A stretch of 64,000 bases of DNA from positions 62,001 through 126,000 of IMG/VR virus record IMGVR_UViG_3300008448_000001. The stretch is one strand, 5' to 3'. The notes under the pieces are model-generated. The model made no database searches and was not told the origin of the DNA. It saw only the letters and a program-made list of their open reading frames with translations. Position 1 is the stretch's first letter. Each line of letters opens with the position of its first letter. Of the stretch, positions 2 through 55,375 are shown piece by piece. The translations under genes were made by a program, and so were the position numbers.

Positions 2-1333
2 GGGGCAGCACAGCATCCAATTTCAGAAGCGTTTGAAACGGATAAATCACCCGAGAGCAGGCTTCAGCGGTTAAAGCAAAAATTAGTAAGCGGTTCCATT
101 GGCGGTGCAGGCGCCGGCTTAGGTGTACTACTCTCCAGGACAATTAATCGGTATTTAGACAAAGACGCAGCATCCCGTTGCTGGAAAGGTTACGAGCCTG
201 TACCGGGTAAAACTCCTTACAGCGAAGACAGTTGCAAGCCGGTTGGTTCCAAAGCAAAGAAAAAGGAAAAGAAAGCAGCAGGCTGCGGCTGTGGTGGTCA
301 AAAGTGCGACAACTGCGGCACGGCACCTTGCGAGTGCAACTCCGGCGCAGATCCTTCACGTGCGGTGAAAATTGCCGCAGCCAGGCTTATCATCAAAGTG
401 GCAGGGACGCGGGGTCTATGGGACAACGTCCACGCTAAACGGAAACGAGGCGAAAAGCCTGCTAAGCCAGGCGAGAAGGATTATCCGGACAGCAAGTCGT
501 GGAACGCCACAGTGAAGGCTGGTGCAGTCGATAAGCTCATTTCGATGCTTGCCACTGGCAGACTCAAGCGGGCAGGTATCTTTTATCGAGATCTAGAAAC
601 ACCTTCGGCGACTATCGTCAATGATGACGACCGCTACGGATTGGCCGCAATGCGGACTCAAGAACCTCGTATGTTAACGCGTTTATTTAGTAACCCGGAA
701 ACTGACGCTTTGACGGCTTTGAGTGAGCTGAAAGCGAACAAACCGGAAAGCTTAGAGCGAACTACCCTTCCTGGGCGACATCTTTCGAACGAGTTTGGAG
801 CTACGCTTCAAAAACTTTATCCTTCTCGATACCGTGACCCACAAGAAGGCGAATTATTTTCAACGTTAACAGATTTGATCGACGAGGAGCCCGAGCCTGC
901 ATCCCGTAAAGACGTACAGGCAACGCGTCGACGATATGCTCCCATGATGCATCAACGGTATGCGTCTCAAGCCGATAAAGAAATGATCAGTAAACTTTTT
1001 TCCGCTTTGGAAAAAAGCTATTCAGAGCGCAAAACGAAAGCAGCCAGCGACATTGTTGCTTTAGCTAAGATTGCAGCCGAAGGTGCTTGGACTCGCTCCG
1101 AAGGTAAAAGCGAGTCCGGAGGGCTGAACGCTAAAGGCCGAGCCAGCCTTAAAGCACAAGGGCACGACATCAAACCGCCCGTGACCGAGGATAACCCCAC
1201 CGGTGAGCGAGCTGACCGCAGGGCAAGCTTTTGCGCTAGAATGTCCGGAATGAAGCGAAAGCGAACAAGTGCTGAAACGGCAAGAGACCCGGATAGCCGC
1301 ATCAATAAATCCTTGCGAAAATGGAAATGTTAA
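2..1333 (+). CDS. 5'-truncated modular virion/internal head protein made of short phage modules (CWKGY motif, Cys-rich, GLWDNVHAKR, C-terminal AWTRSEGK...SFCARM...WKC)
   Basis: Frame of ORF 365..1333 stays open back to base 2 (…DKDAASRCWKGYEPVPGK…EKKAAGCGCGG…VKIAAA…). The modules resemble those I recall from T4-like/cyanophage head proteins and are separated by K-x-A motifs. Confidence 0.65.
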   Translation, partial: GAAQHPISEAFETDKSPESRLQRLKQKLVSGSIGGAGAGLGVLLSRTINRYLDKDAASRCWKGYEPVPGKTPYSEDSCKPVGSKAKKKEKKAAGCGCGGQKCDNCGTAPCECNSGADPSRAVKIAAARLIIKVAGTRGLWDNVHAKRKRGEKPAKPGEKDYPDSKSWNATVKAGAVDKLISMLATGRLKRAGIFYRDLETPSATIVNDDDRYGLAAMRTQEPRMLTRLFSNPETDALTALSELKANKPESLERTTLPGRHLSNEFGATLQKLYPSRYRDPQEGELFSTLTDLIDEEPEPASRKDVQATRRRYAPMMHQRYASQADKEMISKLFSALEKSYSERKTKAASDIVALAKIAAEGAWTRSEGKSESGGLNAKGRASLKAQGHDIKPPVTEDNPTGERADRRASFCARMSGMKRKRTSAETARDPDSRINKSLRKWKC

Positions 1334-2599
1334 ATGCAAAGCAAAACCCAGCCCCGGCATATCCTTGTAAGCGGTCACAGTGGTGCAGGTAAATCCACTG
1401 TGTCCGAGGCTTTGGCTAAGAAGCTCAAAATGCCTTTGCTATCGATAGACAATCACCCTGAGTTTCAAACGTTCCTGACGTCTAACCCGGCTGCAAGCCA
1501 CTTAGACCCTCGGCACGCGGAGGGTACGGCTTTTCACGATCTTATTAAGCGGTTAGCTGCTGAAACACTAGCTGAGGCCGACTCGCCTTCCGTTGTAGAG
1601 GGAACTCAGCTAACCCACTTAGAGCCAGAAGAACTGAGCAATTTTGCTGATCGCATTTATGTCCGGGGCAACGCAAGACAGGTTCAAGCTCAGCGGCTTG
1701 CAAGAGCTAAAGCAAGGTGGGATGAGAAAGGTAAAACTTGGACTAAAGATGTAACGGATCGCAAGAAAAAGCTAGGCAAAGCTGTTTATAGCTTTCACGA
1801 TCAACACGTAAAAAACTACAGTCGTATTCCTGGTACGATCAAGTACGATTGGCGTAATGCAAATAGCTTTGACGATTTGCTTACAAATCTGAAAGCTAGC
1901 CGCGAGAAAACTGCAGCAGTTCGCCAGCTGCTTTCTAAAGCGGAGCTTACGGGCTCACGTGGTAGAGCCCAGGTTCACATAGACCCGGCTGTCATTGACC
2001 CGCGTGTAAATCCGATGGCGACTTTAGCCAAGCAGGCTGCTACAATGACTTTGCGGAAAATAACCATCCGCATTGGTTTTTCCCGCAACCCAGTCGAGCA
2101 AAACAGAAAAATGTCCTGCACAGAAGTTCTCCAAGACCTGCTTTACAACTGCATCGATGCCTCCTCCATGCTTAAAAAATGCCACTGGAATGCCCAGGGT
2201 ACGATGTTTAAGCCTCTGCACGATTTCTTGGGAAGCGGCTACGAGCTTTTAGACTCGCTCACGGACGACGTTGCAGAACGTATGGCTACGCTTGACAGCC
2301 CTGCCGATAGCTCACCCGCGAAGGTGGCCGCAAAGTCAGCGTTGACCGCTTTGCCAACAAAGTTCATGCAAGCCGACAATATTTTAGTTGAAATGGACAG
2401 CCGACTTTCAACGCTTGTTGACAAATTCAAAGCGGCTATTTCTGATACGGAAGACGATCCTGTGACCAGCAACATGCTACAGGATATGACGCAGAGACTT
2501 GAGAAGTATCACTGGATGCTTCGGCGTCAGAATGAAAAGCGGGAAACGGCTTCAAAGGAAGCCGCCGCAAGGGTGTTGGCTTCTTTTATAAAGGTCTAG
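1334..2599 (+). CDS. P-loop nucleotide-kinase-like domain fused to a Dps (DNA-protecting ferritin-like) domain
   Basis: Walker A GHSGAGKST at the N-terminus. C-terminal half has the Dps signature HWNAQGTMFKPLHDFL…Y…DDVAERM and ends LEKYHWML. Confidence 0.85.
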   Translation: MQSKTQPRHILVSGHSGAGKSTVSEALAKKLKMPLLSIDNHPEFQTFLTSNPAASHLDPRHAEGTAFHDLIKRLAAETLAEADSPSVVEGTQLTHLEPEELSNFADRIYVRGNARQVQAQRLARAKARWDEKGKTWTKDVTDRKKKLGKAVYSFHDQHVKNYSRIPGTIKYDWRNANSFDDLLTNLKASREKTAAVRQLLSKAELTGSRGRAQVHIDPAVIDPRVNPMATLAKQAATMTLRKITIRIGFSRNPVEQNRKMSCTEVLQDLLYNCIDASSMLKKCHWNAQGTMFKPLHDFLGSGYELLDSLTDDVAERMATLDSPADSSPAKVAAKSALTALPTKFMQADNILVEMDSRLSTLVDKFKAAISDTEDDPVTSNMLQDMTQRLEKYHWMLRRQNEKRETASKEAAARVLASFIKV

Positions 2600-2636
2600 T
2601 AATTAGACGCTCTCGCTTAAAAACGGATTTAACGAT

Positions 2637-4370
2637 ATGTTGCAACCGGACGTTTGTCTCACAGTTGTCCTCGACGAAGCCGACAATTTCCTTGTCATTC
2701 GTCGAAGCGCAAGGAACACGCGTTCCGGTCAGTGGGAACCGCCGCTCGGCCACCGTGATCCCGGTGAGATCGCAACGTCTGCTGCTTTAAGGGAGGTAGA
2801 GGAAGAGACGGGACTTTCTGTTCGCTTGTTCAGCGGAACGCTTAACAAGCGAACGGGTGACGGTAAACGTATTCGCTTGTTCTTGGCAAGGGCAACGGGC
2901 AGTAAGCCATCGGTTAAAACTGAGCCAAGCGAGCACGATGCGCACAAGTGGTTGTCTTTAGATCAAATGAACTCGTTGCAAGACTGCCACGAAACATTGA
3001 AAACGGATATTTCAGCTTTACTCAAGGCCAACAAACAAACAAAAGAGGCTAGTATGTTTCCTGCCGCAGGACAACCGGGATTAGGATCACAATTCGCACC
3101 TCGCTTTTCCGGGACTTATCAGCCTCGGCTAGCAGGTAACCCGAATCCACTTGCGAGTGTTCAACCTCCGGACGTTACAAAGGCGGATACGGCAGGCGTT
3201 CAACAGGCTTTAGCCAAGGTTGGATCCATGTGTCGCACGGCGACCGGGGACGGGCCTAAGCGTTACAAAGTGAACCCGGAAGATACTGCCATCGGAGAAA
3301 AAGCGTTTGAAAGCCTGGATCGCTTTAAGCGAGCCGGGCTTAATAACTTTCAAGCTAGCTTTTTCAGCCGCATGGTTGAAGAAGGCCGGAGCTCGACGCA
3401 AATCAAGCAGGCGATCGAAATGACGGGCAAAAGATTTGGAAATGCCGTCGCTGGCGAACTGGCGGAAGGTTTTTCCAAGCTTGCAGGTATTGGTGCTGTG
3501 CCGGATTTTACTTCGCCTCCAAAGCCGATTTCGCCGGCAGGGATTGGCAAAGCGACGCAACCGCTTTCAAGTGGTTCGCCCGGGCCCGCTAATCCAAAAG
3601 GTACGATTGGCGGTGCTTTGATGTCGTATGCAAAAGAGCCGTACGATCACCGCAGCGAAAAACCACTTGGCGGTTATCTTCCTATGTTTCCCGGAATGCT
3701 CCGAGGAGCCTTGCCGGGGGTTATGCAGGGTGCTGGAACGGCTGCGACAGGGACTGGAGCCGCTGCGACGGGGGCTGGATCGACTGCGGGGTCCGGGGCT
3801 GGTGCGGCTGCGGGCTTAAGCGGTGGGTCGTGGCTACCTTGGGCGAGCAGCACAGCTGCAGCGGCTGCAGCTCCCGCCGCAGCTAGAACTTGGAAAGATC
3901 TCGGTAGAGAGGCTTTAGCCACCGCTGGCGGTATGTCCCTGGGTGGACTTGGTATGAGTTCAGTTATGCCGAATGTTGACGACATAACGGACAAGTTTCT
4001 CTCACACCCTAAGCTCGCCCCTTTGTTAGAACTCGCAGGAAATGTGAATTCCGGCCAGGCTTTCGACCTCAAAGGTATGTTTGAGCAAAACAAAGACTGG
4101 TTGATACCGCTACTTGCCACTATGGCGGCGGGTACGGCTGGCGGAGGCATGCTCGGGGGTTCGAGCGGAGCGCTGGGTGGTGCGATAGGCTTACCTTTGA
4201 TTTACTACCTCATGCAGAACCCGGAAGCACTGAGCCAGTTCACAGGCGGGGCCAAGGCACCGGCAGCACAAGCTCCAGCGGCACAAGCTCGACCGACAGC
4301 TGGTCCGATGCGACCAGGTGGTGCTATCGCGAATCCGGCGACCGAAACCTTTACACCGGCTTCGGAGTAA
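2637..4370 (+). CDS. NUDIX hydrolase domain fused to a long Gly/Ala/Pro-rich region with glycine-zipper helices (probable virion protein)
   Basis: Nudix box GHRDPGEIATSAALREVEEETGL. C-terminal hydrophobic GxxxG segments. Confidence 0.8.
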   Translation: MLQPDVCLTVVLDEADNFLVIRRSARNTRSGQWEPPLGHRDPGEIATSAALREVEEETGLSVRLFSGTLNKRTGDGKRIRLFLARATGSKPSVKTEPSEHDAHKWLSLDQMNSLQDCHETLKTDISALLKANKQTKEASMFPAAGQPGLGSQFAPRFSGTYQPRLAGNPNPLASVQPPDVTKADTAGVQQALAKVGSMCRTATGDGPKRYKVNPEDTAIGEKAFESLDRFKRAGLNNFQASFFSRMVEEGRSSTQIKQAIEMTGKRFGNAVAGELAEGFSKLAGIGAVPDFTSPPKPISPAGIGKATQPLSSGSPGPANPKGTIGGALMSYAKEPYDHRSEKPLGGYLPMFPGMLRGALPGVMQGAGTAATGTGAAATGAGSTAGSGAGAAAGLSGGSWLPWASSTAAAAAAPAAARTWKDLGREALATAGGMSLGGLGMSSVMPNVDDITDKFLSHPKLAPLLELAGNVNSGQAFDLKGMFEQNKDWLIPLLATMAAGTAGGGMLGGSSGALGGAIGLPLIYYLMQNPEALSQFTGGAKAPAAQAPAAQARPTAGPMRPGGAIANPATETFTPASE

Positions 4371-6732: not shown

Positions 6733-6755
6733 CTAAGCACGCTCCAGCCCACTTG

Positions 6756-6784
6756 AATACCCGGCACACGCCGGGTATTTTTTT
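6756..6784 (+). terminator. Rho-independent terminator
   Basis: AATACCCGGC-ACAC-GCCGGGTATT followed by a T-run. Confidence 0.85.
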
Positions 6785-6786
6785 GC

Positions 6787-6814
6787 TTGACACTTGCCAG
6801 CTTGTGGTTATCTT
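6787..6814 (+). promoter_or_regulatory. sigma70-like promoter heading the accessory/early region
   Basis: TTGACA (6787-6792), 16 bp spacer, TATCTT (6809-6814), immediately after the terminator. Confidence 0.6.
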
Positions 6815-7673: not shown

Positions 7674-7753
7674 CGGAAGCCCTCAAGCTTGGTAAAGTAC
7701 TAAGCGATTCAAAATCGCTTTCACGGACGAAAGCAAAGCAAGTGGGAGTGGTT

Positions 7754-8158
7754 ATGCGTAAGTTGATGTTGCTCTGTGCTTTGGTCTGCAGTTCAAATGC
7801 TTTTGCACAGTCTAGCCCGTCCGATCGCCATGTTGTTTCGAGCGGATTTGTTCTCGCTCCTGGCGAGAAGATCATCGCTGTTAACGGCGTTCCTGTAGCA
7901 CAAGAAACCGTTTGCCAAGGCAGACCTGTGGTGGCCGGAAGCGTTGCCCAGGCCAAAGCACAGCAGCAAGCTGCAGAGGGACGAATGCGGCACGTTGGAG
8001 GTGGCATGGGTGCCGGTAGCTACGAGGGCGTAGGTTTCTCGACCGTGTCAGCGGAACACGCTGTTTCTAAATGTTGCTACTGGGGGCAGCGAAAAGCTAT
8101 TGACATTGGTGTCGCTCGCGGTAGAAATGGTTGGTATGCAACAGTGATTTATCGCTAG
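7754..8158 (+). CDS. Secreted small protein, CAP/SCP-like C-terminal motif
   Basis: Signal peptide MRKLMLLCALVCSSNAFA. Motif MRHVGG…YEGVG…CCYWG…GVARGRNGWYATVIY. Confidence 0.6.
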   Translation: MRKLMLLCALVCSSNAFAQSSPSDRHVVSSGFVLAPGEKIIAVNGVPVAQETVCQGRPVVAGSVAQAKAQQQAAEGRMRHVGGGMGAGSYEGVGFSTVSAEHAVSKCCYWGQRKAIDIGVARGRNGWYATVIYR

Positions 8159-8736: not shown

Positions 8737-8811
8737 GGATCGGTAGCTAATTTGGTCAAAGCTATGGCGCTTCAAGTGCCAAAGACGCAGGTTCGAATCC
8801 TGCCCGATCCT
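8737..8811 (+). tRNA. Normal-length tRNA-like gene with UCA anticodon (candidate opal suppressor), element 4
   Basis: 75-nt cloverleaf: GGATCGG/CCGATCC; GCT/AGC D-stem with GG in the loop; anticodon stem TGGCG/TGCCA, loop CT-TCA-AG (anticodon 8772-8774); variable AAGAC; GCAGG-TTCGAAT-CCTGC; discriminator U. Confidence 0.75.
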
Positions 8812-43132: not shown

Positions 43133-45646
43133 ATGACGACGATCAAAAAGGCGAGTATTGGCGGCAGTGGCGGAGAGACTGAGTTTGAGCAGGCTTTCTC
43201 CAGTTTGGCCTATGCTTATTTGCGAGACAAGGCACCGCGACTGCTGGATCACATGATCGGCTTTCAGCTCGTTGACCGAAATGATGACAACACGAAGGCG
43301 ATGGGTGTTTTCGGCTTTCAGTTGGGGTCGCAATGGCTTTATGCTCCCGTGTTCTTCTTGAACGGTGACCTTAAAGGCCACGAGCTCCTTTACATCAAGA
43401 ACAACGATTCGTTTGTTCCGATGAAGGAGAACTGGATCAATTACATCATGAGCCGTAAGCCGCACATTCTTGGCGAGTCGTCGGCTTCCAAGCTGCGAGA
43501 TCTCGGGGGTGTATATCCCGACGTCCGCACGCTGTCTATTCCGCCTTCCATCGGTGGCGGCAAGCGAGCTAGCGACAGCTACAGGGTGAAGCAACTGCCC
43601 AAGGCTGCCTTTGATTCGGTCTTACCGTTACTTGCTGCTTTCAAGACGCAGGCCGCCAGCTCCTTGTTCAAGATCGCCGGAGGCTCACTTAAAGGTCGCA
43701 AGCTCGATCAGTCCGCCGTCGTTGCTGAGCCGTTTAAGGTGGCTTTCGCTAAAACGGCTGCTGCGTTTGACATGAACACGGTTCTGCCGCAAAGTTCGGA
43801 GCTGCTGTTCAAAGCTTATGCTGTCGCTGAAAAGTATCCCTTGGTTAAATCCGCTTTTAACCGTTTTTACGGTGACGACTGCTTTATGCGTTGGGGTTTG
43901 GCGTGCAAGCAAAACGCCAAGCAAGCTTCGCAAAGCATCGTCAAATCGTCGGCAGCTAAGCCGTCTTCTCTTAGCGGTATGCGACTGATCCCTGACTCCC
44001 AGGGCGAAACCGTGGATCACGTCAAGGCTGGTAACCTTCGGCTTTACACCGCCGAGTCGGGTATGGCGAACCGTGTACCGGAGCTTGACGACGCTGAGCG
44101 TGAACGTTTATTGAATGACACCATGCTTATCGTCGACCATCGAAAGGGTATTCAGGTCAGCCGAACGTACAACACGCAAATCGAGCAGAAGCTTACGAAT
44201 CCTTCCGAGACGTCGCTTTACCGCGTCTTGGAGAAGCCTGGCAAGTTCAGCAAAATGCTCGTTTTGACTCACGGCAGCAGCAATCGTGGCCGCGAGCCTT
44301 TTGTGGTTGTTATCCGGTTGGGCGAAGGGGGCGAGTCGCGCAATTGGATTAGCACGCACGCGACGAATGTTTTTGCGGATCAGATAAGCGAAAGGGACGA
44401 GTGGGATTCCTGGTTTGAGTCCTTGGCAGACGCCAGTTCGCTTTCCGAAAACGGTGTTTACGTTGGTTTGGATGCAACAGGCTCGGCCACTGTTCCGTTT
44501 ACTGTGCAGGAGTCGCTGGGTGACGGTAACTATCGCGTGAACTTTCACACGCATGTTCGTTACGACAACGATCGAGGCTCGACTATGCCTCGCCTTCTCA
44601 AGGTGACCGATCCGTACACGATGGATGGCTACAACCAGCCTAGCACTTACAATGCGTTGCTTTGCGTGGACAAAGAAAACAAACGCGGTACAAAACTCAG
44701 GGCAATCGCGGGTGAGTTGCGTGTCCCAGCCGGCTTTAAATTTATGAAGCTGCCAAGTTCTGACGATAGCGGCTGCGGCTGTGGCTCGTGCGAACCGGCG
44801 GATAAAGACAGTCCGATACAGTTGGGTAGCATCGATGACATTCAGTTGCTGATTCACGAAAAGACGGCCCGGCTCAAGGTTTTCAATAACGGGACGGATG
44901 TCTTTATTGACTCGGTCCTTGGCAAGCACAGCTTTTCAAAACGTGCAGCTTTGTGGGATCTTGTCAGCGTCCACGGTATGCGGGAAGACGTTTCGCGGGA
45001 GATTCTCAAGCAAGCGGAATCACGCGGCAGTGCTGTTTACCGCATAGAGTATGCTCCCGGCTACGGTACGCAAAAAAAGGCGTATCCTAACCACAGCGTA
45101 TTGGCGGGTGGTCCCGATGCACCTGTGTATGACGACTTGGCAGACGAGAGAAGCACGGAGCAATACGGTCCGAGAACCTCGGCAAACACGCAATACGCAG
45201 GTAACGCGGTTTATCGTTTGAACCACATGAGTGCGGACCAGACTGATCCGGGAGTCTGGGATCCTTGGCAAAACTACGAGGCCCAGGACTTCGGTACTTC
45301 CATGCAGGTGGCCCAACAAGCCGGAGCGCAAGGGCAAAAGGAAGTCTTTGATACGACGATGATTTCCGGCATGCTGAAATCTGTTCGGCAAGACTCGCTT
45401 GTCGAACGGCACTTGTCGCCGCTTGTCGAATCGCTTGATTCGCTTGGGCGTTTGCTGATGAACTTTTACTGGCACGGTGAAGAGTTTGAAGACCGTTACG
45501 GCAAGGCGGATATGCCCGAGCTGGAAGATAGTCTTCGTAACGCGTTTGAGGCTATCGGTGACATCACTTTGTTCCTCAAAGAGAAGTCGGTAGAATCACC
45601 GTTTGACGAAGGAGATGTGAACTTGGACGAGCTTTCTAGGAACTAG
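43133..45646 (+). CDS. Large head-module protein
   Basis: 837 aa with many K-x-A motifs, located in the head operon. Confidence 0.7.
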   Translation: MTTIKKASIGGSGGETEFEQAFSSLAYAYLRDKAPRLLDHMIGFQLVDRNDDNTKAMGVFGFQLGSQWLYAPVFFLNGDLKGHELLYIKNNDSFVPMKENWINYIMSRKPHILGESSASKLRDLGGVYPDVRTLSIPPSIGGGKRASDSYRVKQLPKAAFDSVLPLLAAFKTQAASSLFKIAGGSLKGRKLDQSAVVAEPFKVAFAKTAAAFDMNTVLPQSSELLFKAYAVAEKYPLVKSAFNRFYGDDCFMRWGLACKQNAKQASQSIVKSSAAKPSSLSGMRLIPDSQGETVDHVKAGNLRLYTAESGMANRVPELDDAERERLLNDTMLIVDHRKGIQVSRTYNTQIEQKLTNPSETSLYRVLEKPGKFSKMLVLTHGSSNRGREPFVVVIRLGEGGESRNWISTHATNVFADQISERDEWDSWFESLADASSLSENGVYVGLDATGSATVPFTVQESLGDGNYRVNFHTHVRYDNDRGSTMPRLLKVTDPYTMDGYNQPSTYNALLCVDKENKRGTKLRAIAGELRVPAGFKFMKLPSSDDSGCGCGSCEPADKDSPIQLGSIDDIQLLIHEKTARLKVFNNGTDVFIDSVLGKHSFSKRAALWDLVSVHGMREDVSREILKQAESRGSAVYRIEYAPGYGTQKKAYPNHSVLAGGPDAPVYDDLADERSTEQYGPRTSANTQYAGNAVYRLNHMSADQTDPGVWDPWQNYEAQDFGTSMQVAQQAGAQGQKEVFDTTMISGMLKSVRQDSLVERHLSPLVESLDSLGRLLMNFYWHGEEFEDRYGKADMPELEDSLRNAFEAIGDITLFLKEKSVESPFDEGDVNLDELSRN

Positions 45647-46331: not shown

Positions 46332-47339
46332 TTGAGTAGAACTTACAACGATATCCGGTTGGCCGACCCTTTCTTGCAACCATTTTGGCGGCACGAGCGG
46401 GTTCTTTCCATGTTGGCGGCGTGGCCACCGGAGCGATGCAAACGCTTTGACGACCAGTGGATTCAAGGTTACCGTTCGTATCTTTTCACCTGGAACAAGG
46501 GCGGCTCCAGGCGTACTTCGCTTTTGTATGACAATCCCGGGTTGTACTACGCTCACAACATGTTTGTAAACCGACTTAATGATCCGGAGATGTCGTTGAT
46601 CATTGAAGCCAGGCTACTTTCGGGTATGTCTTACGAGGCGATTGCCGAAGAAAACAAGACCATACCCGAGACGATTCAATGGTACGAAAAGCTTTTCTTT
46701 AACGTCAAAGAGTTTCTTCGACATCACGATTGGATTTTACGCAACGTGTTGGTACCCGCGTCGGATCGTTTCGTAGACGTTGAAAATGAGCAGGACAGCG
46801 ACAAACGACCCAGGTTCGAGATAAAGCCTCATTTCGATATGACGCTTAAATTTTTCGCTTATTACGGTGGTCCTGTTCTTTGCGACTTTATGCTCAGCGG
46901 ATTCAAGCGCGGAGTTAAGGTTGAGCGACTCGATGACGTTGAGCCTTGGCTGGACAGTCAGTGGTCCAACCAGATACGCCGCAAGAGCGCACAGGCCGCA
47001 GGGCAGTTCCGGGTAAACAACTTTAACGTGATGGAACTGTTCGTCGTACACGCTAAGCTCATCGAGATTCAGCAACGCGTCGACGACAAGCAGACTCGCC
47101 ACAACGAATTCGAGAAGCACATTAACGCCATGTTGTCCGAAATGCCGTGGGTTGTCGGCGATGAGGGCGAAAAGCTATATGCTGAAACACCTTTGGGCCT
47201 GTATGATAGACGGGCAGCTGAGCTGGATGGCTCTGAGGTTATGACAGTAGGTGCTGGCGGAAAAATCGGTACTGACCTGAAAGACGTAGACGAAAACATA
47301 TTCCGTCGCACGGAGACAAAAGATGGAAAACCTAAATAG
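46332..47339 (+). CDS. Hypothetical protein
   Basis: 335-aa ORF, TTG start. Confidence 0.7.
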   Translation: MSRTYNDIRLADPFLQPFWRHERVLSMLAAWPPERCKRFDDQWIQGYRSYLFTWNKGGSRRTSLLYDNPGLYYAHNMFVNRLNDPEMSLIIEARLLSGMSYEAIAEENKTIPETIQWYEKLFFNVKEFLRHHDWILRNVLVPASDRFVDVENEQDSDKRPRFEIKPHFDMTLKFFAYYGGPVLCDFMLSGFKRGVKVERLDDVEPWLDSQWSNQIRRKSAQAAGQFRVNNFNVMELFVVHAKLIEIQQRVDDKQTRHNEFEKHINAMLSEMPWVVGDEGEKLYAETPLGLYDRRAAELDGSEVMTVGAGGKIGTDLKDVDENIFRRTETKDGKPK

Positions 47340-48630
47340 GCAGGACGAAGAGCTGCTGATGGCAGGCGTCAAGCAAGCGGTAGCCCTGGTGGACGATCGG
47401 GGTCTTACGCCGAATGATGCCTTGCACAAGGTTGCTCAAGACCTGGGTTTTACGCCGGGTTTTCTTAAAGCAGCGTGCAACGCTTTCAACACTGGGCGAC
47501 AGCTTGCACAGTGGGAGGCCAACTCCAGTGTCCTGGACAAGCTTGCGGATTTCCCTTTGGCGGACTACTCGGAAGTGCATGACCGGATTTGGGGAAGCAC
47601 CAAGGAGAAGGTGGCACACGTGTCGACAACGTCTCCCAAGTTTCGAAGCTATGCAGACAAGCACAGTTTGCTAAAAGCGGATTTAAAGTTCACTGAGAAA
47701 GTCGCTGCCGAGTTGCCAGCCACTGCACCAGACGCCGGGATCAAGAAGGCCTTCGACGCTAAAGACTACCAACAACGGCTTATGCGCGAAGCTAACCGTG
47801 AGAAGGTTGCAGCGGAAGACCAAATGAATCTTAAGCTGCATTTACTGGTTTCTTACTTTAAAAAATCGGCTTACGACCGTTTGCCACTTGCGCAAGTGGA
47901 ACATGCTGCCGGAATCTATTACGGTGCAGCTGGTAACTCGCTTATGCAGCATGTCGCCTCACACTTCCCGAACGAGAAGAAAGCGTCAGACCATAAACCC
48001 ACGTGGTCCGGCTTCCGGGCTGTAGCGGAGCGGGGTGCGGCACCGTACACTTTGATCGACGCATGCATCAAGCAAGCGGAAGAGCTTATTTTGGCTGAAG
48101 AAAAGCTTGCCAAGCATGTCGCTGCGGCAGCTAAAGCCACGCGTTTTGCGGACGATCTGTACGCCAAACTGCGGCCCGAGGTCACGAAGCAAGCCAACCT
48201 GTCTTCGATTATCGGCGGCGTTGCCGGAGGTTTCGGCATGGGGGCTGCGAAAAACCTGGGGGAGTCGGTTGCAGAGGGTGGTAATTCCGCTCTCGAAAGC
48301 GAGATTCAAAATTTAGACAGCCCTGATCATTTGAACGAACTACGCAAAATTCGGGCGCAAACCGCTCTCACCCAGATGATGAGCGACCCGGAAAACCCTG
48401 TAAGCGAATACGAGCCTGATCAGGTTCTCAACGCGTACAATGAGCTAGTACAGCTTTCTCCTCGTTTAGCGGACCAACCTTCTGCCCTTGGCCCTTTGTT
48501 GCGTAAGCGGCTTATGGGCAACACTGAACCTTTTGAGATTGGCGAGGCGATCAAGCTCGAGGAAGGTTTACGCCGCACACAAAGTACTCCAACCCAAATG
48601 ATGCGAAATGAAGCCAGTATCCTTAGCTAA
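47323..48630 (+). CDS. Head-module protein (K-x-A rich)
   Basis: EKVA (3 times), KKSA, EKKA, TKQA. Glycine-zipper segment. Confidence 0.7.
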   Translation: MENLNRQDEELLMAGVKQAVALVDDRGLTPNDALHKVAQDLGFTPGFLKAACNAFNTGRQLAQWEANSSVLDKLADFPLADYSEVHDRIWGSTKEKVAHVSTTSPKFRSYADKHSLLKADLKFTEKVAAELPATAPDAGIKKAFDAKDYQQRLMREANREKVAAEDQMNLKLHLLVSYFKKSAYDRLPLAQVEHAAGIYYGAAGNSLMQHVASHFPNEKKASDHKPTWSGFRAVAERGAAPYTLIDACIKQAEELILAEEKLAKHVAAAAKATRFADDLYAKLRPEVTKQANLSSIIGGVAGGFGMGAAKNLGESVAEGGNSALESEIQNLDSPDHLNELRKIRAQTALTQMMSDPENPVSEYEPDQVLNAYNELVQLSPRLADQPSALGPLLRKRLMGNTEPFEIGEAIKLEEGLRRTQSTPTQMMRNEASILS

Positions 48631-49788: not shown

Positions 49789-51267
49789 ATGATTAAATTT
49801 GTATCGCCGTCAGGCTGGGAATTCGACAGGCAAATTGTTGTGCCCGTTAAAGTCAGTAGCCGAGGGCTTATCGGCAACGACAGGCGTGACTTCTTAAAGA
49901 CTGCGAGTCACGCCTTTTTGCCGCACGTCGACAATTACAAGTTTGCAAGCGACGAGATACCTGTGCATTTGATTGCACTCGGGGCGAGCGAAGCCTACGG
50001 TCCGAATCGCAACGGTGACGGTTTCAAGGAAGCGACTTGCAAAAAGTATCATGACACCTTTGTCAAGCTTGCTAAGTTTTTTCGAAACCACAAGAACAAG
50101 CCGGAACGCGGTGATCCTTTTTATGGGTATGTTAAAGCTTCTGCCTACAACGACGACATGCGACGGGTTGAGTTGCTTTGTGCGTTGAACGCCAACAAGG
50201 CGGCAGCGGATCGTAACGGTGGCCTGGTCGCCGACACCGAAGTGGAGAAGATTGCAAGGGGCGAAGACTTTCCGGTGAGCATGGCTTGTCGCGTACCGAA
50301 TGACATTTGTTCGTTCTGCAAGCACGCCGCAAAAACCCGGGACGAGTATTGCACCAGTGAGAAATGCGCCGCAGGCGGTTGCAGACACAACCTTTCGCGG
50401 TTGGTGAAAGTTGGCGGTGACTTACATCACCTGCACGTTGACAACCCTGACCCGGCTTGGTTCGACATTTCGCGTGTCTTTAGGCCAGCCGACCGTATCG
50501 CTTATGGTGCCAAGGCGGACTACTTTACAAAAGCGGCCTCTGACGATGGGATTTTTGATCTCCAAGATTGCATCAAAATGTCTTGTAACTCCACGGCACC
50601 GCTTGACGTGATCTTGTACCAGTCCGGGCAGCACGGTTTCTGGTCCGAAAAGACAGCATCTCAAATTCGACTCGGTTACGCCCTGGCTACCGCCGAGAAG
50701 ACTTCGGCGTTGCCTGACACCTTGTTGGCTGGTATAGCCACGCAAGCTTTTCCGATCGAGAAGCTTGCGGCTTTCGGTACCCCTACCTGTGACCGCCAGC
50801 TGGCGGCCTTGGCAGACCGTTGCATATTTTTAAGCCTTGCAGATTACGGCAGGCTTTCTGCTCGGTCGACGCATGTTAAAGCTGCGCAGAATGTGTTGCC
50901 GTCGATTTACGGTACGATGGCCACTGACGAGTCGTTGCCACTACGGATAGAGCAGTCGCCTTCGGTGCTGATTGATAAGGTTGCTACTTTTAAGGACGAT
51001 CTCCTGGCGACTTCTCTCGTCAAAGATTTTTCTTTTTACAAGGAATCTGTTTATCTCCGAAGCATGTTGGGCTGTTGTCGCGAGTCTCGAATACCTAAAA
51101 TCGGAAAACATGAGAAGCTTGCGGCGTGTAATTTTGAGAGTAAGGCGTTAGCTGAAGACTACGCTATGTATAAGCTGGCAGCACTTTGGCGGTCAGCCGC
51201 TCACAATCCAAACTTCCCGTTGACAGTGCGGTTCGCCGTCTGTCAGAATCAACTTTTTAGCGTGTAA
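49789..51267 (+). CDS. Prohead maturation protease (HK97/assemblin-like fold) with Cys-rich insertion
   Basis: NRNGDGF, candidate catalytic His in FRNHKN, Ser in PVSMAC, and DISRVFRPAD (E/D-x-S-x-V-x-x-PA-like). Lies directly upstream of scaffold-like and capsid genes. Confidence 0.7.
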   Translation: MIKFVSPSGWEFDRQIVVPVKVSSRGLIGNDRRDFLKTASHAFLPHVDNYKFASDEIPVHLIALGASEAYGPNRNGDGFKEATCKKYHDTFVKLAKFFRNHKNKPERGDPFYGYVKASAYNDDMRRVELLCALNANKAAADRNGGLVADTEVEKIARGEDFPVSMACRVPNDICSFCKHAAKTRDEYCTSEKCAAGGCRHNLSRLVKVGGDLHHLHVDNPDPAWFDISRVFRPADRIAYGAKADYFTKAASDDGIFDLQDCIKMSCNSTAPLDVILYQSGQHGFWSEKTASQIRLGYALATAEKTSALPDTLLAGIATQAFPIEKLAAFGTPTCDRQLAALADRCIFLSLADYGRLSARSTHVKAAQNVLPSIYGTMATDESLPLRIEQSPSVLIDKVATFKDDLLATSLVKDFSFYKESVYLRSMLGCCRESRIPKIGKHEKLAACNFESKALAEDYAMYKLAALWRSAAHNPNFPLTVRFAVCQNQLFSV

Positions 51268-51296: not shown

Positions 51297-52571
51297 ATGT
51301 CCAAATCTGCAAATTCGATCAATACAATCGACAAATTCTTGCAGGCTGTGAAGAGTAACGTCAAGTTTGCTGCGGAGGCTCACACCGAGCCCGGCAGCAT
51401 TGGTGGTGCTACGACTCACCCTGTCAAAGACGTTGACGATTCCACCGAGGAAGCTTCCGAAGGTTCTCGCTCTGCCGAGAACACCGCTGACGTCAAATCC
51501 GACCAAGGCAAGCCTTCTGTCGACAGCACTTCCGAAAACGTAGCGGCCAAGAAGGCTGCCGCCAAGCGAGCTGTCGACGGCAAATCCGAGGACGGTTCGG
51601 TCAACCCGCCTGGAACTGCTGCGGGCGATCAGCTTCAAATCGGCACGAAGAAGCAACCTACCGGCGAAGACCCTGCGGTTGAAACTGGCTCAGCGAAGGC
51701 TGAAAAAGAAGACGCTGCAGGTGGCCGGCTGGGCAACACGAGTCACCCTGCTCGCACAAACAACGGTGAACTCGACGGCTACAAGTATGCTTCGATGTCC
51801 GTTGAAAAGCTTGCCAGCTTGACGTCTCAACTTGGCAACAGTTTGCTGGCCGAGCTTGCTACAGTGCAAAAGCAAGCAGAGTTGACCGGGGCACAGTCAA
51901 AGCTTGACGTGAACGGTAACGGCAAAATCGAAGGATCGGACCTGGCTTCTTTGCGAAACGACGAAGGTTCCGATGACGACGAGAAGTCTGCCGTAGACGC
52001 CGCCTCTCAAGCAGGCTGGGAACTTGCCGGTTTGCTTAGCGGAAAATTTGACAAGCAAGCCGCAGACGCACTCGTGGCGCAGTCGCTTGAATCGATCATC
52101 AAGGTGGCTGCCGACGATGCGGACAAGGTTGCCGCATTCTTGCGACAGTACGGGGCAGAGCTTGACAAGCAAGCCATGGGTGAGATGCCTGCCGGCATTG
52201 ACCCTGCCGCCTTGGCTGGCGGTGGAGCCCCAGACATGGGCGCAGCAATGGGCGCCGGTGGCCCTCCGCCTGAGGGTGCCGGTGGTGGCTCGCCCGACAT
52301 GGAACAGCTTTTAGCCATCCTCGAACAACTCGGAATTACTCCGGAAGACCTTGAAGCGGCCATGGCTGCTGAAGGCGGTGCCGGTGGTGGTGGCGGCGGT
52401 GGTATGCCTCCCGGCGCACCAGCAGGTGCCCCGCCAGAGGAACCCAAAGCTGAAGAAGCACCGGGAATGGAAGTCGAAGCACGGGCCAAAGCCGCTGCCG
52501 CCAAAAAGGGCGCATCTGACAGTCGCGTCCGCGACTACATCCAAGAGGTCTTGAGCCGTTCGCGGTCCTAA
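51297..52571 (+). CDS. Scaffold/prohead core-like protein
   Basis: Acidic, low complexity, about 10 K-x-A motifs, EF-hand-like DVNGNGKIEGSD. Sits after the protease. Confidence 0.65.
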   Translation: MSKSANSINTIDKFLQAVKSNVKFAAEAHTEPGSIGGATTHPVKDVDDSTEEASEGSRSAENTADVKSDQGKPSVDSTSENVAAKKAAAKRAVDGKSEDGSVNPPGTAAGDQLQIGTKKQPTGEDPAVETGSAKAEKEDAAGGRLGNTSHPARTNNGELDGYKYASMSVEKLASLTSQLGNSLLAELATVQKQAELTGAQSKLDVNGNGKIEGSDLASLRNDEGSDDDEKSAVDAASQAGWELAGLLSGKFDKQAADALVAQSLESIIKVAADDADKVAAFLRQYGAELDKQAMGEMPAGIDPAALAGGGAPDMGAAMGAGGPPPEGAGGGSPDMEQLLAILEQLGITPEDLEAAMAAEGGAGGGGGGGMPPGAPAGAPPEEPKAEEAPGMEVEARAKAAAAKKGASDSRVRDYIQEVLSRSRS

Positions 52572-52583
52572 TTTCAATTTCAA
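52567..52583 (+). promoter_or_regulatory. Intergenic motif CCTAATTTCAATTTCAA, copy 1
   Basis: Identical 17-mer at 53611-53627. Confidence 0.6.
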
Positions 52584-52601
52584 AACTGGAGAAAATCCCT
52601 T

Positions 52602-53030
52602 ATGAACACCAAAATTGCATCCATGATGATCGAGTATATCGCCGCAAGTTCGGCGCTTACCGATCGTCTGCTTGGCGATACTCAACGTTATCGTGCTCAA
52701 GAGAAGGCGGCAGCTGCCAAGCAGTCGTCCACGCTTGAGACGATGTTGCGAAACGACTGTGTTGGGCCAAACGAGAAGCAGGCTGCTGCTTCGATGTTGG
52801 CCGACCACGGTCAAACTCTTGACCTGCTCGTCAACGCTGTTAACAAGATGGCCGAATACCGTGGGCGATCCGAGAAGATCGCAAGCGACCTTGGCCGTCC
52901 TGTGGCAGACCCTGCAGTGAAAACTGCAAGTTACGACAGCCTCAACGACCCGTTTGTTGGGCGTCATTCTTCGCAGAAGAAGGCTTCCGACCTTGCTCTC
53001 CTGCGTGTATTACGTGCACCAGGTTCCTAA
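52602..53030 (+). CDS. Small scaffold-like protein
   Basis: Helical. 7 of 9 Lys are in K-x-A. Confidence 0.7.
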   Translation: MNTKIASMMIEYIAASSALTDRLLGDTQRYRAQEKAAAAKQSSTLETMLRNDCVGPNEKQAAASMLADHGQTLDLLVNAVNKMAEYRGRSEKIASDLGRPVADPAVKTASYDSLNDPFVGRHSSQKKASDLALLRVLRAPGS

Positions 53031-53627: not shown

Positions 53628-53664
53628 CGAGTCTTAGACTCGATTAACCATGGAGGTTACGTTA

Positions 53665-54612
53665 ATGACTGCTACTACTGAAATGACTCGCGAAGAAAGC
53701 TTGTTGGCGAGCCAGGCGATTTTTGAAAAACTTTCTTCTGCGGATCCGTCGATGGCGAAGCAAGCCGTTGACGCCGTCAACGACTTCACCCGTACCAAAA
53801 TGCGGGAAGACGGCTTCTTCCGGCGAATCATGCCACCTATTCCGATCAGCAACGACGATCTCGATCGTCAAGTTGACACGGATAAGCCGGTTAAGATCGT
53901 CGACAAAGAACCGAACAGCCCGGCTGCGGTTTCGATTCCTTTTGCCACGCTGCCTACCAGCTTGTACATCAAGGGTGACCGTTACAAGGTTACCTTTGAC
54001 CGCATCACAACTCCGAAGTTCACCAAGGACGTCGACGAGTTGCGAACCTGGTACATGGACATTCGTCAAGTCCTCAGCGACAACGCGATTAAGGACATGT
54101 TGGCAGAAGAAGACGGCAAGTTCCTAAGCGCGGTCAACACCGCACTTGTCGGGCCGGATCTCATTGTGCCGACTTCCGGCGTTGCCCAGTACCAGACAAT
54201 CTCGGGCGGTATCACGCGGGACACCCTTTGGGACAGTCTCAAGATTTTGCCCGGAACCCCTTCGAACCTCGAAGTGCACTGCGTTCTTCTCAACAACATC
54301 ACCATCAAAGACGTTGCGAAATTCACTCGTAACGAAATGGGTGGTGACTTGTCGGAAGAAATCATGCGTAACGGCTGGACGCTCAGCGAATGCATGGGCG
54401 TTAAGTGGGTTATCACGATCAAGAAGGGGCTGGTTCCAACGAACACCATGTATCACTTTGCCGATCCGAAGTTCATCGGCAAGAGCTACATGTTGGAAGA
54501 CACCACGATGTACATTCGTCGTGAAGCTTACTTCATCGAGTTTTTCGCTTACGAATCGCTCGGTGGAACCATCGGTCACACTTCCGGTCTTGCCCGAGTT
54601 GACTTCGAGTAA
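53665..54612 (+). CDS. Probable major capsid protein
   Basis: About 315 aa, SD GGAGG. Follows protease-scaffold-decoration genes and is followed by a terminator. HK97-like order of elements (long helix …IKDMLAEEDGKFL, terminal beta strands). Confidence 0.75.
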   Translation: MTATTEMTREESLLASQAIFEKLSSADPSMAKQAVDAVNDFTRTKMREDGFFRRIMPPIPISNDDLDRQVDTDKPVKIVDKEPNSPAAVSIPFATLPTSLYIKGDRYKVTFDRITTPKFTKDVDELRTWYMDIRQVLSDNAIKDMLAEEDGKFLSAVNTALVGPDLIVPTSGVAQYQTISGGITRDTLWDSLKILPGTPSNLEVHCVLLNNITIKDVAKFTRNEMGGDLSEEIMRNGWTLSECMGVKWVITIKKGLVPTNTMYHFADPKFIGKSYMLEDTTMYIRREAYFIEFFAYESLGGTIGHTSGLARVDFE

Positions 54613-54976: not shown

Positions 54977-55375
54977 ATGTCGAGAGAAAATCAAGCAACG
55001 CTGCCGGATCCGTCAGCAGCTTACAACACTTTGTTCGACAACGTGCATGCTCAAGTGTTCTTTGGCAAACTCGCAAGCTACGGTATTCAGCCGACTACCG
55101 AAAAAGAAGCTGGCGATTTGCTCGAGATCGCAGCTCAGCTTCGCAATGTTGACAACCCCGTCAAGCAAGCTTCCACTCGCAGCCGTTTCGGTGACGCCGC
55201 ATCGGCTTTGAACTCGGTAGTAAGTTCGACGCCTTACGGGCAAAAGCAAGCTGCAGTTGCCGAGGATCACGCAATCAAACAAGCAGCGGCCACCTTGGCC
55301 CAGGACCCAGCCGTGTACAACGCGGTTTTGGCTCTTCGGGTCCAGGAAGCTGCCGCTCTCGCGGGTAACACCTAA
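54977..55375 (+). CDS. Small internal head protein candidate
   Basis: All 5 Lys are in K-x-A (KLA, KEA, KQA three times). Confidence 0.7.
   Translation: MSRENQATLPDPSAAYNTLFDNVHAQVFFGKLASYGIQPTTEKEAGDLLEIAAQLRNVDNPVKQASTRSRFGDAASALNSVVSSTPYGQKQAAVAEDHAIKQAAATLAQDPAVYNAVLALRVQEAAALAGNT

What the first reader, a model, noticed from the sequence alone, without database searches (positions are those of the whole stretch)
2..4370. Polyprotein-like cargo genes: kinase, Dps and NUDIX domains separated by K-x-A linkers
Seen: domain borders coincide with the motif: kinase-(EKTA…AKQA)-Dps-(SKEA); NUDIX-(TKEA)-low-complexity region; and in the first ORF DKDA, EKKA, IKVA and AKIA each precede a small module. 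Established: Dps protects DNA from iron/peroxide damage and must oligomerise, and NUDIX enzymes degrade nucleotide signals. Inference: these are packaged polyproteins processed into free enzymes that are injected with the DNA for protection or counter-defence.
Basis: partly seen in the sequence, partly recalled or inferred. Interest (0 to 1): 0.7.

Follow-up and report, generated by a model that had tools for sequence, protein, structure and literature searches.

The report
Jumbo-phage enzyme modules joined by K-x-A linkers
Three neighbouring genes of an uncultured 205-kb phage string enzymes (a small kinase, a Dps iron/DNA-protection protein, a NUDIX hydrolase) and tiny modules together through a short Lys-x-Ala motif that is also packed into the phage's head-assembly proteins, so the strings are probably cut into separate proteins by the head-maturation protease, a known strategy with a new cutting signal and new cargo.

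Summary
The window lies in a complete 204,794-bp IMG/VR jumbo-phage genome. ORF g078 (window ..1333) ends in DUF6321. g079 (1334-2599) is a P-loop kinase plus Dps. g080 (2637-4370) is NUDIX plus a conserved core and a Gly-rich tail.

K-x-A alone is barely above chance in these ORFs, but it is a real clade-wide motif:
- In the head-module proteins 42-100% of all lysines sit in K-x-A, against a genome median of 8%.
- This persists in 73 related phages, with K and A conserved and x free.
- The capsid protein carries an invariant K-Q-A at residues 37-39.
- The head module encodes a protease with the T4 gp21 / herpesvirus assemblin fold (Z 8.4).

In cargo proteins, K-x-A marks module borders in 19 of 25 contexts, against 7.5% background. 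Relatives swap NUDIX, metallopeptidase, SNF2 helicase, kinase and Dps exactly at these sites. T4-like cyanophages carry the same small modules without K-x-A.

Best reading: polyvalent cargo polyproteins cut at K-x-A by the prohead protease. Cleavage, packaging and injection are inferred, not shown. This is a new variant of a known kind.

The parts
2..1333 (+). g078, 486 aa, starting at genome 61873 (127 nt before the window). Order of parts: leader MESTMCAVKILAKQA, then a Gly-rich hydrophobic hairpin, KDA, a CWxGY module, KKA, a Cys-rich module, KIA/KVA, a GLWDN module, KRA, a 164-aa module of unknown function, KIA, and DUF6321.
   Evidence: Eight of eight K-x-A sites are kept in relative G001.
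161..169 (+). K-D-A just before the CWxGY module (179-268).
   Evidence: All 4 distinct CWxGY contexts have K-x-A within 10 aa upstream.
395..403 (+). K-V-A just before the GLWDN module (404-565).
   Evidence: All 4 contexts have K-x-A upstream.
566..1075 (+). A 164-aa module bracketed by K-R-A (566-574) and K-I-A (1067-1075). Relative G001 lacks it and has a single K-Q-A at the junction.
   Evidence: RLKRA|GIFY...LAKIA|AEGAW here versus RLKQAEGAW in L011.
1076..1330 (+). DUF6321 module (PF19846).
   Evidence: K-x-A lies upstream in 11 of 17 clade contexts, and the other 6 have K-x-G/S. Among 120 database homologs the split is 79 K-x-A, 14 K-x-[GS] and 5 none.
1334..1906 (+). g079 aa 1-191: P-loop kinase of the NMP / shikimate / gluconate kinase fold, with Walker A GHSGAGKST.
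   Evidence: (pLDDT of 90 or more up to about aa 190).
1907..1915 (+). K-T-A at the end of the kinase module.
   Evidence: 26 of 35 kinase-module homologs (29-44% identity) have K-x-A at this position.
1916..2038 (+). A roughly 40-aa low-confidence spacer that ends in K-Q-A (2030-2038).
   Evidence: pLDDT falls to about 50. KQA is conserved in G001, P0121 and P0122.
2066..2539 (+). Dps (ferritin-like) module, aa 245-402, with the ferroxidase His, His, Asp and Glu positions present.
2555..2563 (+). K-E-A after the Dps core, followed by an 11-aa tail.
   Evidence: the phage-type Dps modules inspected nearly all carry K-[ESMT]-A-A at this position, while cellular-type Dps do not.
2637..3041 (+). 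g080 aa 1-135: NUDIX hydrolase with an intact Nudix box.
3042..3050 (+). K-E-A swap junction. Upstream of it relatives carry NUDIX, a DUF6782 metallopeptidase or a Gly-rich region. Downstream all are homologous.
   Evidence: KEA / KTA / KFA aligned.
3051..4370 (+). g080 conserved core (about aa 180-285, with three further conserved K-x-A sites) and a Gly/Ala-rich C-terminal part with hydrophobic Gly-zipper-like segments.
49789..51267 (+). g133, prohead maturation protease. The N-terminal domain has the T4 gp21 / assemblin fold, with invariant His101 and Ser164 (numbering from the Met at 49789).
51297..53030 (+). g134 (scaffold-like, 15 K-x-A sites) and g135 (7 K-x-A sites in 142 aa).
53650..54612 (+). 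Major capsid protein g137, with an invariant K-Q-A at aa 37-39 (53758-53766).
47323..48630 (+). g130, a head-module protein with 13 K-x-A sites.
54977..55375 (+). g139, in which all 5 lysines lie in K-x-A.

Best explanation
g078, g079 and g080 belong to an operon-like block (g075-g082) of phage 'polyvalent' cargo proteins. In these proteins, independent modules are joined by short linkers carrying K-x-A followed by a small residue (A/S/G). The modules are a P-loop kinase, Dps, NUDIX, DUF6321, small Cys-rich, CWxGY and GLWDN modules and, in relatives, an SNF2 helicase and zincin peptidases.

I propose that the motif is the recognition site of the phage's own prohead maturation protease, g133, which has the gp21/assemblin fold. 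By analogy with assemblin, which cuts Ala|Ser, g133 would cut after the Ala. The polyproteins would be incorporated into the prohead together with the scaffold-like proteins g130, g134, g135 and g139, which are dense in the same motif. They would then be cut into free modules during head maturation and leave with the DNA at infection.

Shown here:
- the domain identities;
- the reality of the motif, its clade-wide conservation and its position at module junctions;
- domain swapping at those junctions;
- the fold of the protease.

Inferred:
- cleavage at K-x-A;
- which protease does it;
- packaging;
- ejection;
- the roles of the enzymes.
For: 1. The motif is real. The fraction of Lys in K-x-A is 0.42-1.0 in g130, g133, g134, g135 and g139, against a genome median of 0.08. 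The consensus is [LF]-E-K-x-A-[AS]-D.
2. It is conserved in head proteins. 47 of 49 head-protein sites are kept in G001 at about 80% identity, with x varying. The enrichment persists in the 29-53 distinct orthologues per protein recovered from 73 related IMG/VR loci. Many sites have K and A at 0.9-1.0 and x at 0.2 or less, and the capsid protein's KQA is invariant in 54 sequences. The motif also appears in the cultured distant relative Salmonella phage Arash: 8 of 16 Lys in scaffold gp223, and VKEA at aa 26-29 of the capsid protein.
3. A matching protease exists. The g133 N-terminal domain matches T4 gp21 at Z 8.4 (rank 1) and VZV protease at Z 5.1 (rank 2). Foldseek's top three hits are also gp21.
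4. The cargo proteins share the motif. K-x-A-[AGS] gives p 6.5e-5 for g078 and 0.011 for g079.
5. The motif sits at module borders. Module starts have K-x-A upstream in 19 of 25 contexts against 7.5% background, and the rest have K-x-G/S. Among DUF6321 homologs, 79 of 98 have it upstream and 40 of 44 downstream. 26 of 35 kinase modules end in K-x-A. Dps modules are flanked by it.
6. Relatives swap cargo at the motif. NUDIX, DUF6782 peptidase or a Gly-rich region sit before an aligned KEA/KTA/KFA. The 164-aa module of g078 is bracketed by KRA and KIA and is absent from G001. Dps occurs solo (starting MKQA), after a helicase, after NUDIX or after a kinase.
7. The motif is not intrinsic to the modules. 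T4-like cyanophages and podoviruses have DUF6321 and CWxGY modules in structural gene clusters without K-x-A. In Syn19_101, 4 of 4 modules are instead preceded by x-N-E, which fits a Glu-specific gp21.
8. A family member is virion-associated. S-SCSM1 gp029 is annotated 'virion protein', from a virion proteome determined by mass spectrometry (PMC9602691).
9. The kinase-Dps linker is predicted to be flexible.
Against: - There is no proteomic or biochemical evidence for cleavage or packaging in this clade.
- The locus is about 40 kb upstream of the head module and has no recognisable late promoter.
- N-terminal K-x-A leaders are not enriched genome-wide: 17 observed against 25 expected.
- Several strongly conserved K-x-A sites lie inside the folded protease domain of g133, so a conserved K-x-A is not necessarily a cut site.
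- Some K-x-A sites in g079 lie inside the Dps fold.
- Dps in other phages sits in replication or nucleotide-metabolism clusters.
- A 12-mer Dps shell could not pass through a tail, so it would have to travel unassembled.
- The counts across homologs are not phylogenetically independent.
Confidence: 0.55

Rival explanations
1. K-x-A is only a favoured Ala/Lys-rich linker or helix-capping sequence. The proteins act as uncut multidomain enzymes in the infected cytoplasm (nucleotide metabolism, iron or ROS control) and are never packaged.
For: The bare K-x-A excess in the three ORFs is small. The locus is far from the head genes. Dps in other phages lies among replication genes. The helix predicted through K192-A194 continues past the site. 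No proteomics exist.
Against: This does not explain why the same tripeptide takes up 42-100% of the lysines in scaffold-like head proteins, or why it is invariant in the capsid protein's N-terminal region. It does not explain why the same modules in T4-like phages use x-x-E instead, or why three unrelated module families share it at their borders.
Confidence: 0.2
2. The linkers are cut, but by a cargo-encoded zincin metallopeptidase rather than the prohead protease. Candidates are g077 (HExxH at aa 202) and the DUF6782 domain in relatives. This follows the autoprocessing model for polyvalent proteins proposed by Iyer et al. 2017.
For: g077 carries HELTH. G003's g080 homolog has DUF6782. L128 and L130 have HELGH modules. 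The model itself is in PMC5512222.
Against: G001 lacks g077 yet keeps the cargo K-x-A sites. The motif is densest in head-assembly proteins next to the gp21-like protease. The zincin modules are themselves swappable cargo.
Confidence: 0.12
3. K-x-A is a binding or targeting motif, for example for docking to the capsid interior, the portal or DNA, and not a scissile site.
For: It recurs in scaffold-like proteins, which must bind the shell. Some conserved sites lie in folded regions.
Against: A tripeptide with a free middle residue and a small following residue is typical of protease subsites. A capsid-protein site near the N-terminus is the classic position for propeptide removal. The spacing of 10-40 aa in g135 and g139 resembles scaffold cores that are degraded.
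Confidence: 0.08

Closest known systems
Phage polyvalent proteins (Iyer, Burroughs, Anand, de Souza and Aravind 2017, PMC5512222)
   Same: Several unrelated enzymatic or effector domains sit in one polypeptide. Domains are shuffled rampantly between relatives. SNF2 helicase and zincin peptidase modules are present. The proteins are predicted to be packaged in the capsid and processed into units.
   Different: Here the units are delimited by a specific tripeptide that is shared with the head-assembly proteins, which points to the prohead protease rather than an in-cis metallopeptidase. A text search of that paper found no mention of ferritin and a single mention of NUDIX, so Dps at least does not appear among the domains it discusses. 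The locus is several mid-sized genes rather than one giant protein.
T4 internal proteins and Alt, and the phiKZ / SPN3US ejection proteins, which are processed by the gp21-type prohead protease at L/I-x-E or A/S/G-x-E (own knowledge; PMC5694885, PMC10052503, listed)
   Same: A gp21/assemblin-fold protease. A short consensus site shared by the capsid protein, the scaffold core and the packaged proteins. The scaffold core is dense in sites.
   Different: The predicted specificity is K-x-A followed by A/S/G (small P1, Lys at P3) instead of Glu at P1. Cleavage would separate enzyme domains from one another rather than only removing propeptides. Nothing has been verified experimentally.
Herpesvirus assemblin maturation and release sites, (V/L/I)-x-A|S (own knowledge)
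   Same: Ala at P1, Ser/Ala at P1', and the same protease fold (VZV protease Z 5.1, HCMV protease Z 3.5).
   Different: Lys rather than an aliphatic residue at P3. The host is a phage and there are many more substrates. The similarity in specificity is an inference.
DUF6321-containing modular virion proteins of T4-like cyanophages and pelagiphages (S-SCSM1 gp029, Syn19_101, HTVC115P gp68)
   Same: The same small modules (DUF6321, CWxGY). The genes sit in structural clusters. One is annotated as a virion protein.
   Different: These have no K-x-A linkers and carry no kinase, Dps or NUDIX cargo. In Syn19_101 the junctions carry x-N-E.

Membership tests
Phage polyvalent proteins (Iyer 2017) | Two or more unrelated enzymatic or effector domains in one polypeptide | tested here: met
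   Kinase plus Dps in g079, NUDIX plus a conserved core in g080, and several small modules plus DUF6321 in g078.
Phage polyvalent proteins (Iyer 2017) | Extensive domain shuffling among homologs | tested here: met
   DUF6321 proteins range from 107 to 1295 aa in 17 relatives. Kinase modules occur in 300-2000-aa proteins. Helicase-Dps, NUDIX-Dps and solo Dps all occur.
Phage polyvalent proteins (Iyer 2017) | Signature modules (SNF2 helicase, zincin metallopeptidase) | tested here: met
   SNF2 and Helicase_C in G003's DUF6321 protein, DUF6782 in G003's g080 homolog, and HExxH in g077.
Phage polyvalent proteins (Iyer 2017) | Packaged in the virion and delivered with the DNA | not testable with these tools
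   Only indirect evidence: the annotation of the relative S-SCSM1 gp029 as a virion protein.
Prohead-protease-processed head and ejection proteins (T4 / phiKZ type) | A gp21/assemblin-fold maturation protease encoded in the head module | tested here: met
   g133 model has mean pLDDT 81. It matches T4 gp21 at Z 8.4 with 140 of 165 residues aligned, and VZV protease at Z 5.1. His101 and Ser164 are invariant.
Prohead-protease-processed head and ejection proteins (T4 / phiKZ type) | One short consensus site shared by the capsid protein, the scaffold core and the cargo | tested here: met
   Met at the sequence level only.
Prohead-protease-processed head and ejection proteins (T4 / phiKZ type) | Short N-terminal targeting or propeptide that ends at a site | tested here: inconclusive
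   g077, g078, g082, g127, g130, g134 and g135 have K-x-A within the first 20 aa, and g077's leader is duplicated internally. The genome-wide count is not enriched, at 17 against 25 expected.
Prohead-protease-processed head and ejection proteins (T4 / phiKZ type) | Cleavage demonstrated by protein chemistry | not testable with these tools
   The published Arash virion table gives only coverage values and is uninformative.
Dps (ferritin-like DNA-protection proteins) | Full four-helix Dps core with the ferroxidase His, His, Asp and Glu | tested here: met
   aa 245-402 align to whole Dps chains (E 3e-17). The HWN, LHD and DDVAER positions are conserved in the alignment. Residue roles are from own knowledge of E. 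coli Dps.
Dps (ferritin-like DNA-protection proteins) | Dodecamer assembly | not tested
   No complex prediction was run.
NUDIX hydrolases | Nudix box GX5EX7REUXEEXGU | tested here: met
   GHRDPGEIATSAALREVEEETGL in g080. PF00293 E 2.6e-17.
Zeta-toxin / UNAG kinases | Full-length match to the zeta-toxin kinase domain | tested here: not met
   The Pfam Zeta_toxin hit covers only aa 3-80 and scores 22.6 against a cut-off of 22.3. The best fold matches are NMP, shikimate and gluconate kinases.

The most novel reading that the evidence does not exclude
A large, mostly uncultured clade of 150-225-kb phages has a gp21/assemblin-type prohead protease with a new K-x-A|(A/S/G) specificity. Its cultured outliers include Salmonella phage Arash. 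The clade would use this site as a universal 'cut here' connector, so that almost any enzyme can be packaged as a bead on a polyprotein, released inside the capsid and injected. The candidates include Dps, a nucleotide-type kinase, NUDIX, SNF2 helicase and zincin peptidases. The same bead families in T4-like cyanophages carry linkers that end in Glu, which would mean that linkers co-evolve with the resident protease.
Probability: 0.4. Interest if true: 0.75.

Novelty: new variant of a known kind. Interest (0 to 1): 0.6.

Why it matters
If the motif is a protease site, three things follow.
- It gives a sequence-only rule for reading the packaged proteome, and the mature protein boundaries, of a widespread clade of uncultured jumbo phages.
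- It adds Dps and a small-molecule kinase to the list of candidate injected proteins.
- It suggests that cargo linkers track the specificity of the resident head protease: K-x-A here, x-x-E in T4-like cyanophages.

The rule can be tested now in a cultured relative, Salmonella phage Arash. Even if the cargo is not packaged, the motif is a new predicted specificity for the gp21/assemblin protease family.

Tried and rejected
- **Nucleotide and protein searches against cultured phages.** Megablast of the locus found nothing. tblastn with g079 found only Dps genes in unrelated phages.
- **Family searches on the head and upstream genes.** PHROGs and Pfam were almost empty for the head proteins and for g073-g077. 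A Peptidase_S77 family search of the genome gave no hit, so the protease had to be identified by fold.
- **Cargo homologs in Arash.** There are no useful homologs of g078 or g080, and the published virion table cannot show termini.
- **Ferritin search across 30 relatives.** It mostly found a different ferritin-like gene that is unrelated to this locus and lacks K-x-A. I set it aside.
- **N-terminal leaders.** An enrichment test for K-x-A leaders was negative.
- **Shared promoter.** A k-mer search for a common promoter gave only terminator T-runs.
- **Joint kinase and Dps alignment.** Alignment A2 misaligned the kinase fragments onto Dps and was discarded. Only aa 1-262 of g079 were folded.
- **The 164-aa module of g078.** The Atlas search gave nothing.
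- **Zeta-toxin identity of the kinase.** Rejected.
- **Genetic code.** I saw no sign of an alternative code: all three stop codons are used.

Full report
**Context**

The window is bases 62001-126000 of a single 204,794-bp IMG/VR virus record with direct terminal repeats, estimated to be complete. Nearly all genes are on the + strand. The window holds a DNA-repair exonuclease-like gene, ribonucleotide reductase, split RNA-polymerase beta-like genes, a head module and collagen-like tail fibres. No cultured phage is similar at the DNA level.

The capsid protein (window 53650-54612) recovers 73 related IMG/VR loci. Most come from contigs of 150-225 kb, with 96% down to 28% identity. Among cultured phages it finds only distant relatives: Salmonella phage Arash, three Vibrio phages and Bacillus phage G. 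The genome therefore belongs to a large, essentially uncultured jumbo-phage clade.

**The observation**

The three ORFs are as described.
- **g078** runs from genome 61873, 127 nt before the window, to window 1333. It is 486 aa long and ends in DUF6321 (E 3e-19).
- **g079** (window 1334-2599) has an N-terminal P-loop kinase. Its model is confident up to about aa 190, and the best fold matches are NMP, shikimate and gluconate kinases, not zeta toxin. Its C-terminal part is a complete Dps core at aa 245-402, with the ferroxidase positions kept.
- **g080** (window 2637-4370) has a NUDIX domain with an intact Nudix box. This is followed by a region conserved across the clade and a Gly/Ala-rich tail with hydrophobic segments.

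**Is it more than chance?**

K-x-A is a weak pattern, expected about once per 200 aa. In these three ORFs it is only mildly over-represented, and half of the sites in g079 lie inside the Dps fold. Three further lines of evidence make the case.

First, the motif is real in this genome. The extended K-x-A-[AGS] occurs 128 times against 76 expected. Controls with R, E, S, T, D or N in place of K show no excess; Q and L show a smaller one. The excess is concentrated in a few proteins: g130, g133, g134, g135 and g139 of the head module, g210, and then g078 and g079. In those head proteins 42-100% of all lysines are in K-x-A, against a genome median of 8%, and the consensus is [LF]-E-K-x-A-[AS]-D.

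Second, the motif is under selection.
- In the close relative G001, 47 of 49 head-protein sites are kept at about 80% identity while the middle residue changes.
- In alignments of 29-53 distinct orthologues per protein from those loci the enrichment persists. Many sites have K and A conserved at 0.9-1.0 with x at 0.2 or less.
- The capsid protein has an invariant K-Q-A at residues 37-39.
- Phage Arash shows the same pattern: 8 of 16 lysines in its scaffold-like gp223, and VKEA at aa 26-29 of its capsid protein.

Third, in the cargo proteins the motif sits at module borders far more often than chance.
- 19 of 25 distinct starts of CWxGY, GLWDN and DUF6321 modules have K-x-A within 10 residues upstream, against 7.5% background. 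The other six have K-x-G or K-x-S.
- Among the 120 best of 3,254 DUF6321 homologs, 79 have K-x-A upstream, 14 have K-x-[GS] and 5 have neither. Downstream, 40 of 44 have K-x-A.
- Kinase-module homologs of 29-44% identity sit inside proteins of 300-2000 aa, and 26 of 35 carry K-x-A right after the last kinase helix. That is exactly where g079 has K192-T-A.
- Phage-type Dps modules are preceded by K-x-A and followed by a K-[ESMT]-A-A tail, whereas cellular-type Dps are not.
- One representative, P0133, reads N-terminal module / KxA / Dps / KEA / spacer / KAA / CWxGY / KSA..KLA / Cys-rich / KAA / DUF6321. Another, P0122, is NUDIX / KxA / Dps.

**Domain swapping at the linkers**

- G001 has Dps without the kinase. 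Its g078 homolog lacks the 164-aa central module. The junction there reads RLKQA-EGAW, where this genome has RLKRA|...module...|LAKIA-AEGAW.
- G003 (91% capsid identity) has an SNF2 helicase fused to the Cys-rich module and DUF6321. It has a solo Dps that begins MKQA-A. In place of NUDIX it has a DUF6782 metallopeptidase.
- Aligning g080 with its homologs puts KEA, KTA and KFA in the same column. Upstream of that column the sequences are unrelated: NUDIX, a peptidase or a Gly-rich region. Downstream they are homologous.
- g077, just upstream of the window, has HExxH at aa 202. It repeats its own leader SCMQTTEIQKLA at aa 2-13 and 387-398, as if two leader-bearing genes had fused.

**What reads the motif?**

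g133 (window 49789-51267) lies between g130 and the scaffold-like g134. Folded with 36 homologs, its model has a mean pLDDT of 81. The N-terminal domain matches the T4 prohead protease gp21 at Z 8.4 (rank 1 of 48,161 chains) and varicella-zoster protease at Z 5.1 (rank 2). Foldseek also ranks gp21 first. His101 and Ser164 are invariant.

From established knowledge, herpesvirus assemblins cut (V/L/I)-x-A|S. A site with Ala at P1 and a small P1' residue is therefore within the family's known range. The Lys at P3 would be new.

**Is the motif a property of the modules themselves?**

It is not. DUF6321 occurs in 503 cultured-phage records, mostly T4-like cyanophages, pelagiphages and T7-like cyanopodoviruses, and it lies in structural gene clusters. 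Those copies lack K-x-A linkers. In Syn19_101 all four modules are instead preceded by x-N-E, which fits a Glu-specific gp21-type protease. That example is anecdotal, but it points the same way.

S-SCSM1 gp029, a family member, is annotated as a virion protein. That phage's virion proteome was determined by mass spectrometry (PMC9602691).

**Mechanism proposed**

g075-g082 lie between two strong intrinsic terminators and probably form one transcription unit of polyvalent cargo proteins. I propose that these proteins enter the prohead, are cut at K-x-A by g133 together with the scaffold-like proteins and the capsid propeptide, and are released as free kinase, Dps, NUDIX and small modules that accompany the DNA.

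In g079 the cuts would fall after A194, A235 and A410. This would excise a spacer of about 40 aa that is predicted to be flexible and an 11-aa tail.

The sequence facts are shown. The cleavage, the packaging and the ejection are inferred. The physiological roles are speculation: iron or peroxide protection by Dps, nucleotide turnover by the kinase and NUDIX. The general concept is known from polyvalent proteins (PMC5512222), from T4 internal proteins and from the phiKZ/SPN3US ejection proteins (papers listed).

**Caveats**
- The locus is about 40 kb from the head genes.
- N-terminal K-x-A leaders are not enriched genome-wide.
- Some conserved K-x-A sites lie inside the folded protease domain.
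- Dps in other phages sits among replication genes.
- The homolog counts are not phylogenetically independent.

The rival explanations are an uncut linker, cleavage by the cargo-encoded zincin, and a docking motif.

**Verdict**

This is a new variant of a known kind, with a new predicted protease specificity and new cargo types, and it can be tested directly in phage Arash and with recombinant g133.

Noticed in passing
window 8737-8811: A tRNA with anticodon UCA, which ARAGORN labels tRNA-SeC. The genome uses all three stop codons (TAA 106, TGA 69, TAG 66), so recoding is not evident. It may be an opal suppressor.
   Followed up: partly
L016 (G001:C1:170474-173140), the homolog of window 49789-51267: In relative G001 the prohead-protease gene is interrupted by an in-frame insertion of about 1.1 kb near residue 200, giving an 878-aa open frame. 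It could be an intein or a mobile insertion.
   Followed up: no
L004:13669-15870 (genome 59669-61870, just upstream of the window): g077 is a 733-aa protein with a zincin HExxH at aa 202. It has a duplicated leader SCMQTTEIQKLA at aa 2-13 and 387-398. The gene is absent from relative G001 apart from its last 27 codons.
   Followed up: partly
L004:8737-10800 (genome 54737-56800): g073 has four tandem repeats of about 150 aa (GDGYRF...YRRRNxF..GE.VRIVKP) separated by AEEAKKAEE-type charged repeats. Its function is unknown.
   Followed up: no
window 43133-45646: The portal-like g127 carries an insertion at aa 144-263 with eight K-x-A sites. The insertion is missing from most relatives.
   Followed up: no
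L008:4513-5694 (genome 182513-183697, minus strand): g210, far from the head module and on the opposite strand, has the strongest K-x-A-[AGS] enrichment in the genome (12 vs 1.4). Its only family hit is a weak DUF6582 match.
   Followed up: no
L004 11056-11082 and window 6755-6790: Two strong intrinsic terminator-like hairpins bracket g075-g082, which suggests a single cargo transcription unit of about 11.6 kb.
   Followed up: partly
L145 (Syn19_101) and L144 (S-SCSM1 gp029): In T4-like cyanophages the same small modules (CWxGY, DUF6321, CYxKVK) are preceded by x-N-E or x-S-E rather than K-x-A. In Syn19_101 this holds for 4 of 4 modules.
   Followed up: partly
window 7742-8158: g084 is a small protein with a signal-peptide-like N-terminus. 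It is conserved next to the cargo block in several relatives.
   Followed up: no
L092 (Salmonella phage Arash 138723-163580): The published Arash virion proteome is dominated by RNA-polymerase beta and beta' subunits (PMC10585845). This suggests that the wider group packages its RNA polymerase. This genome's split RNAP genes lie directly upstream of its head module.
   Followed up: no
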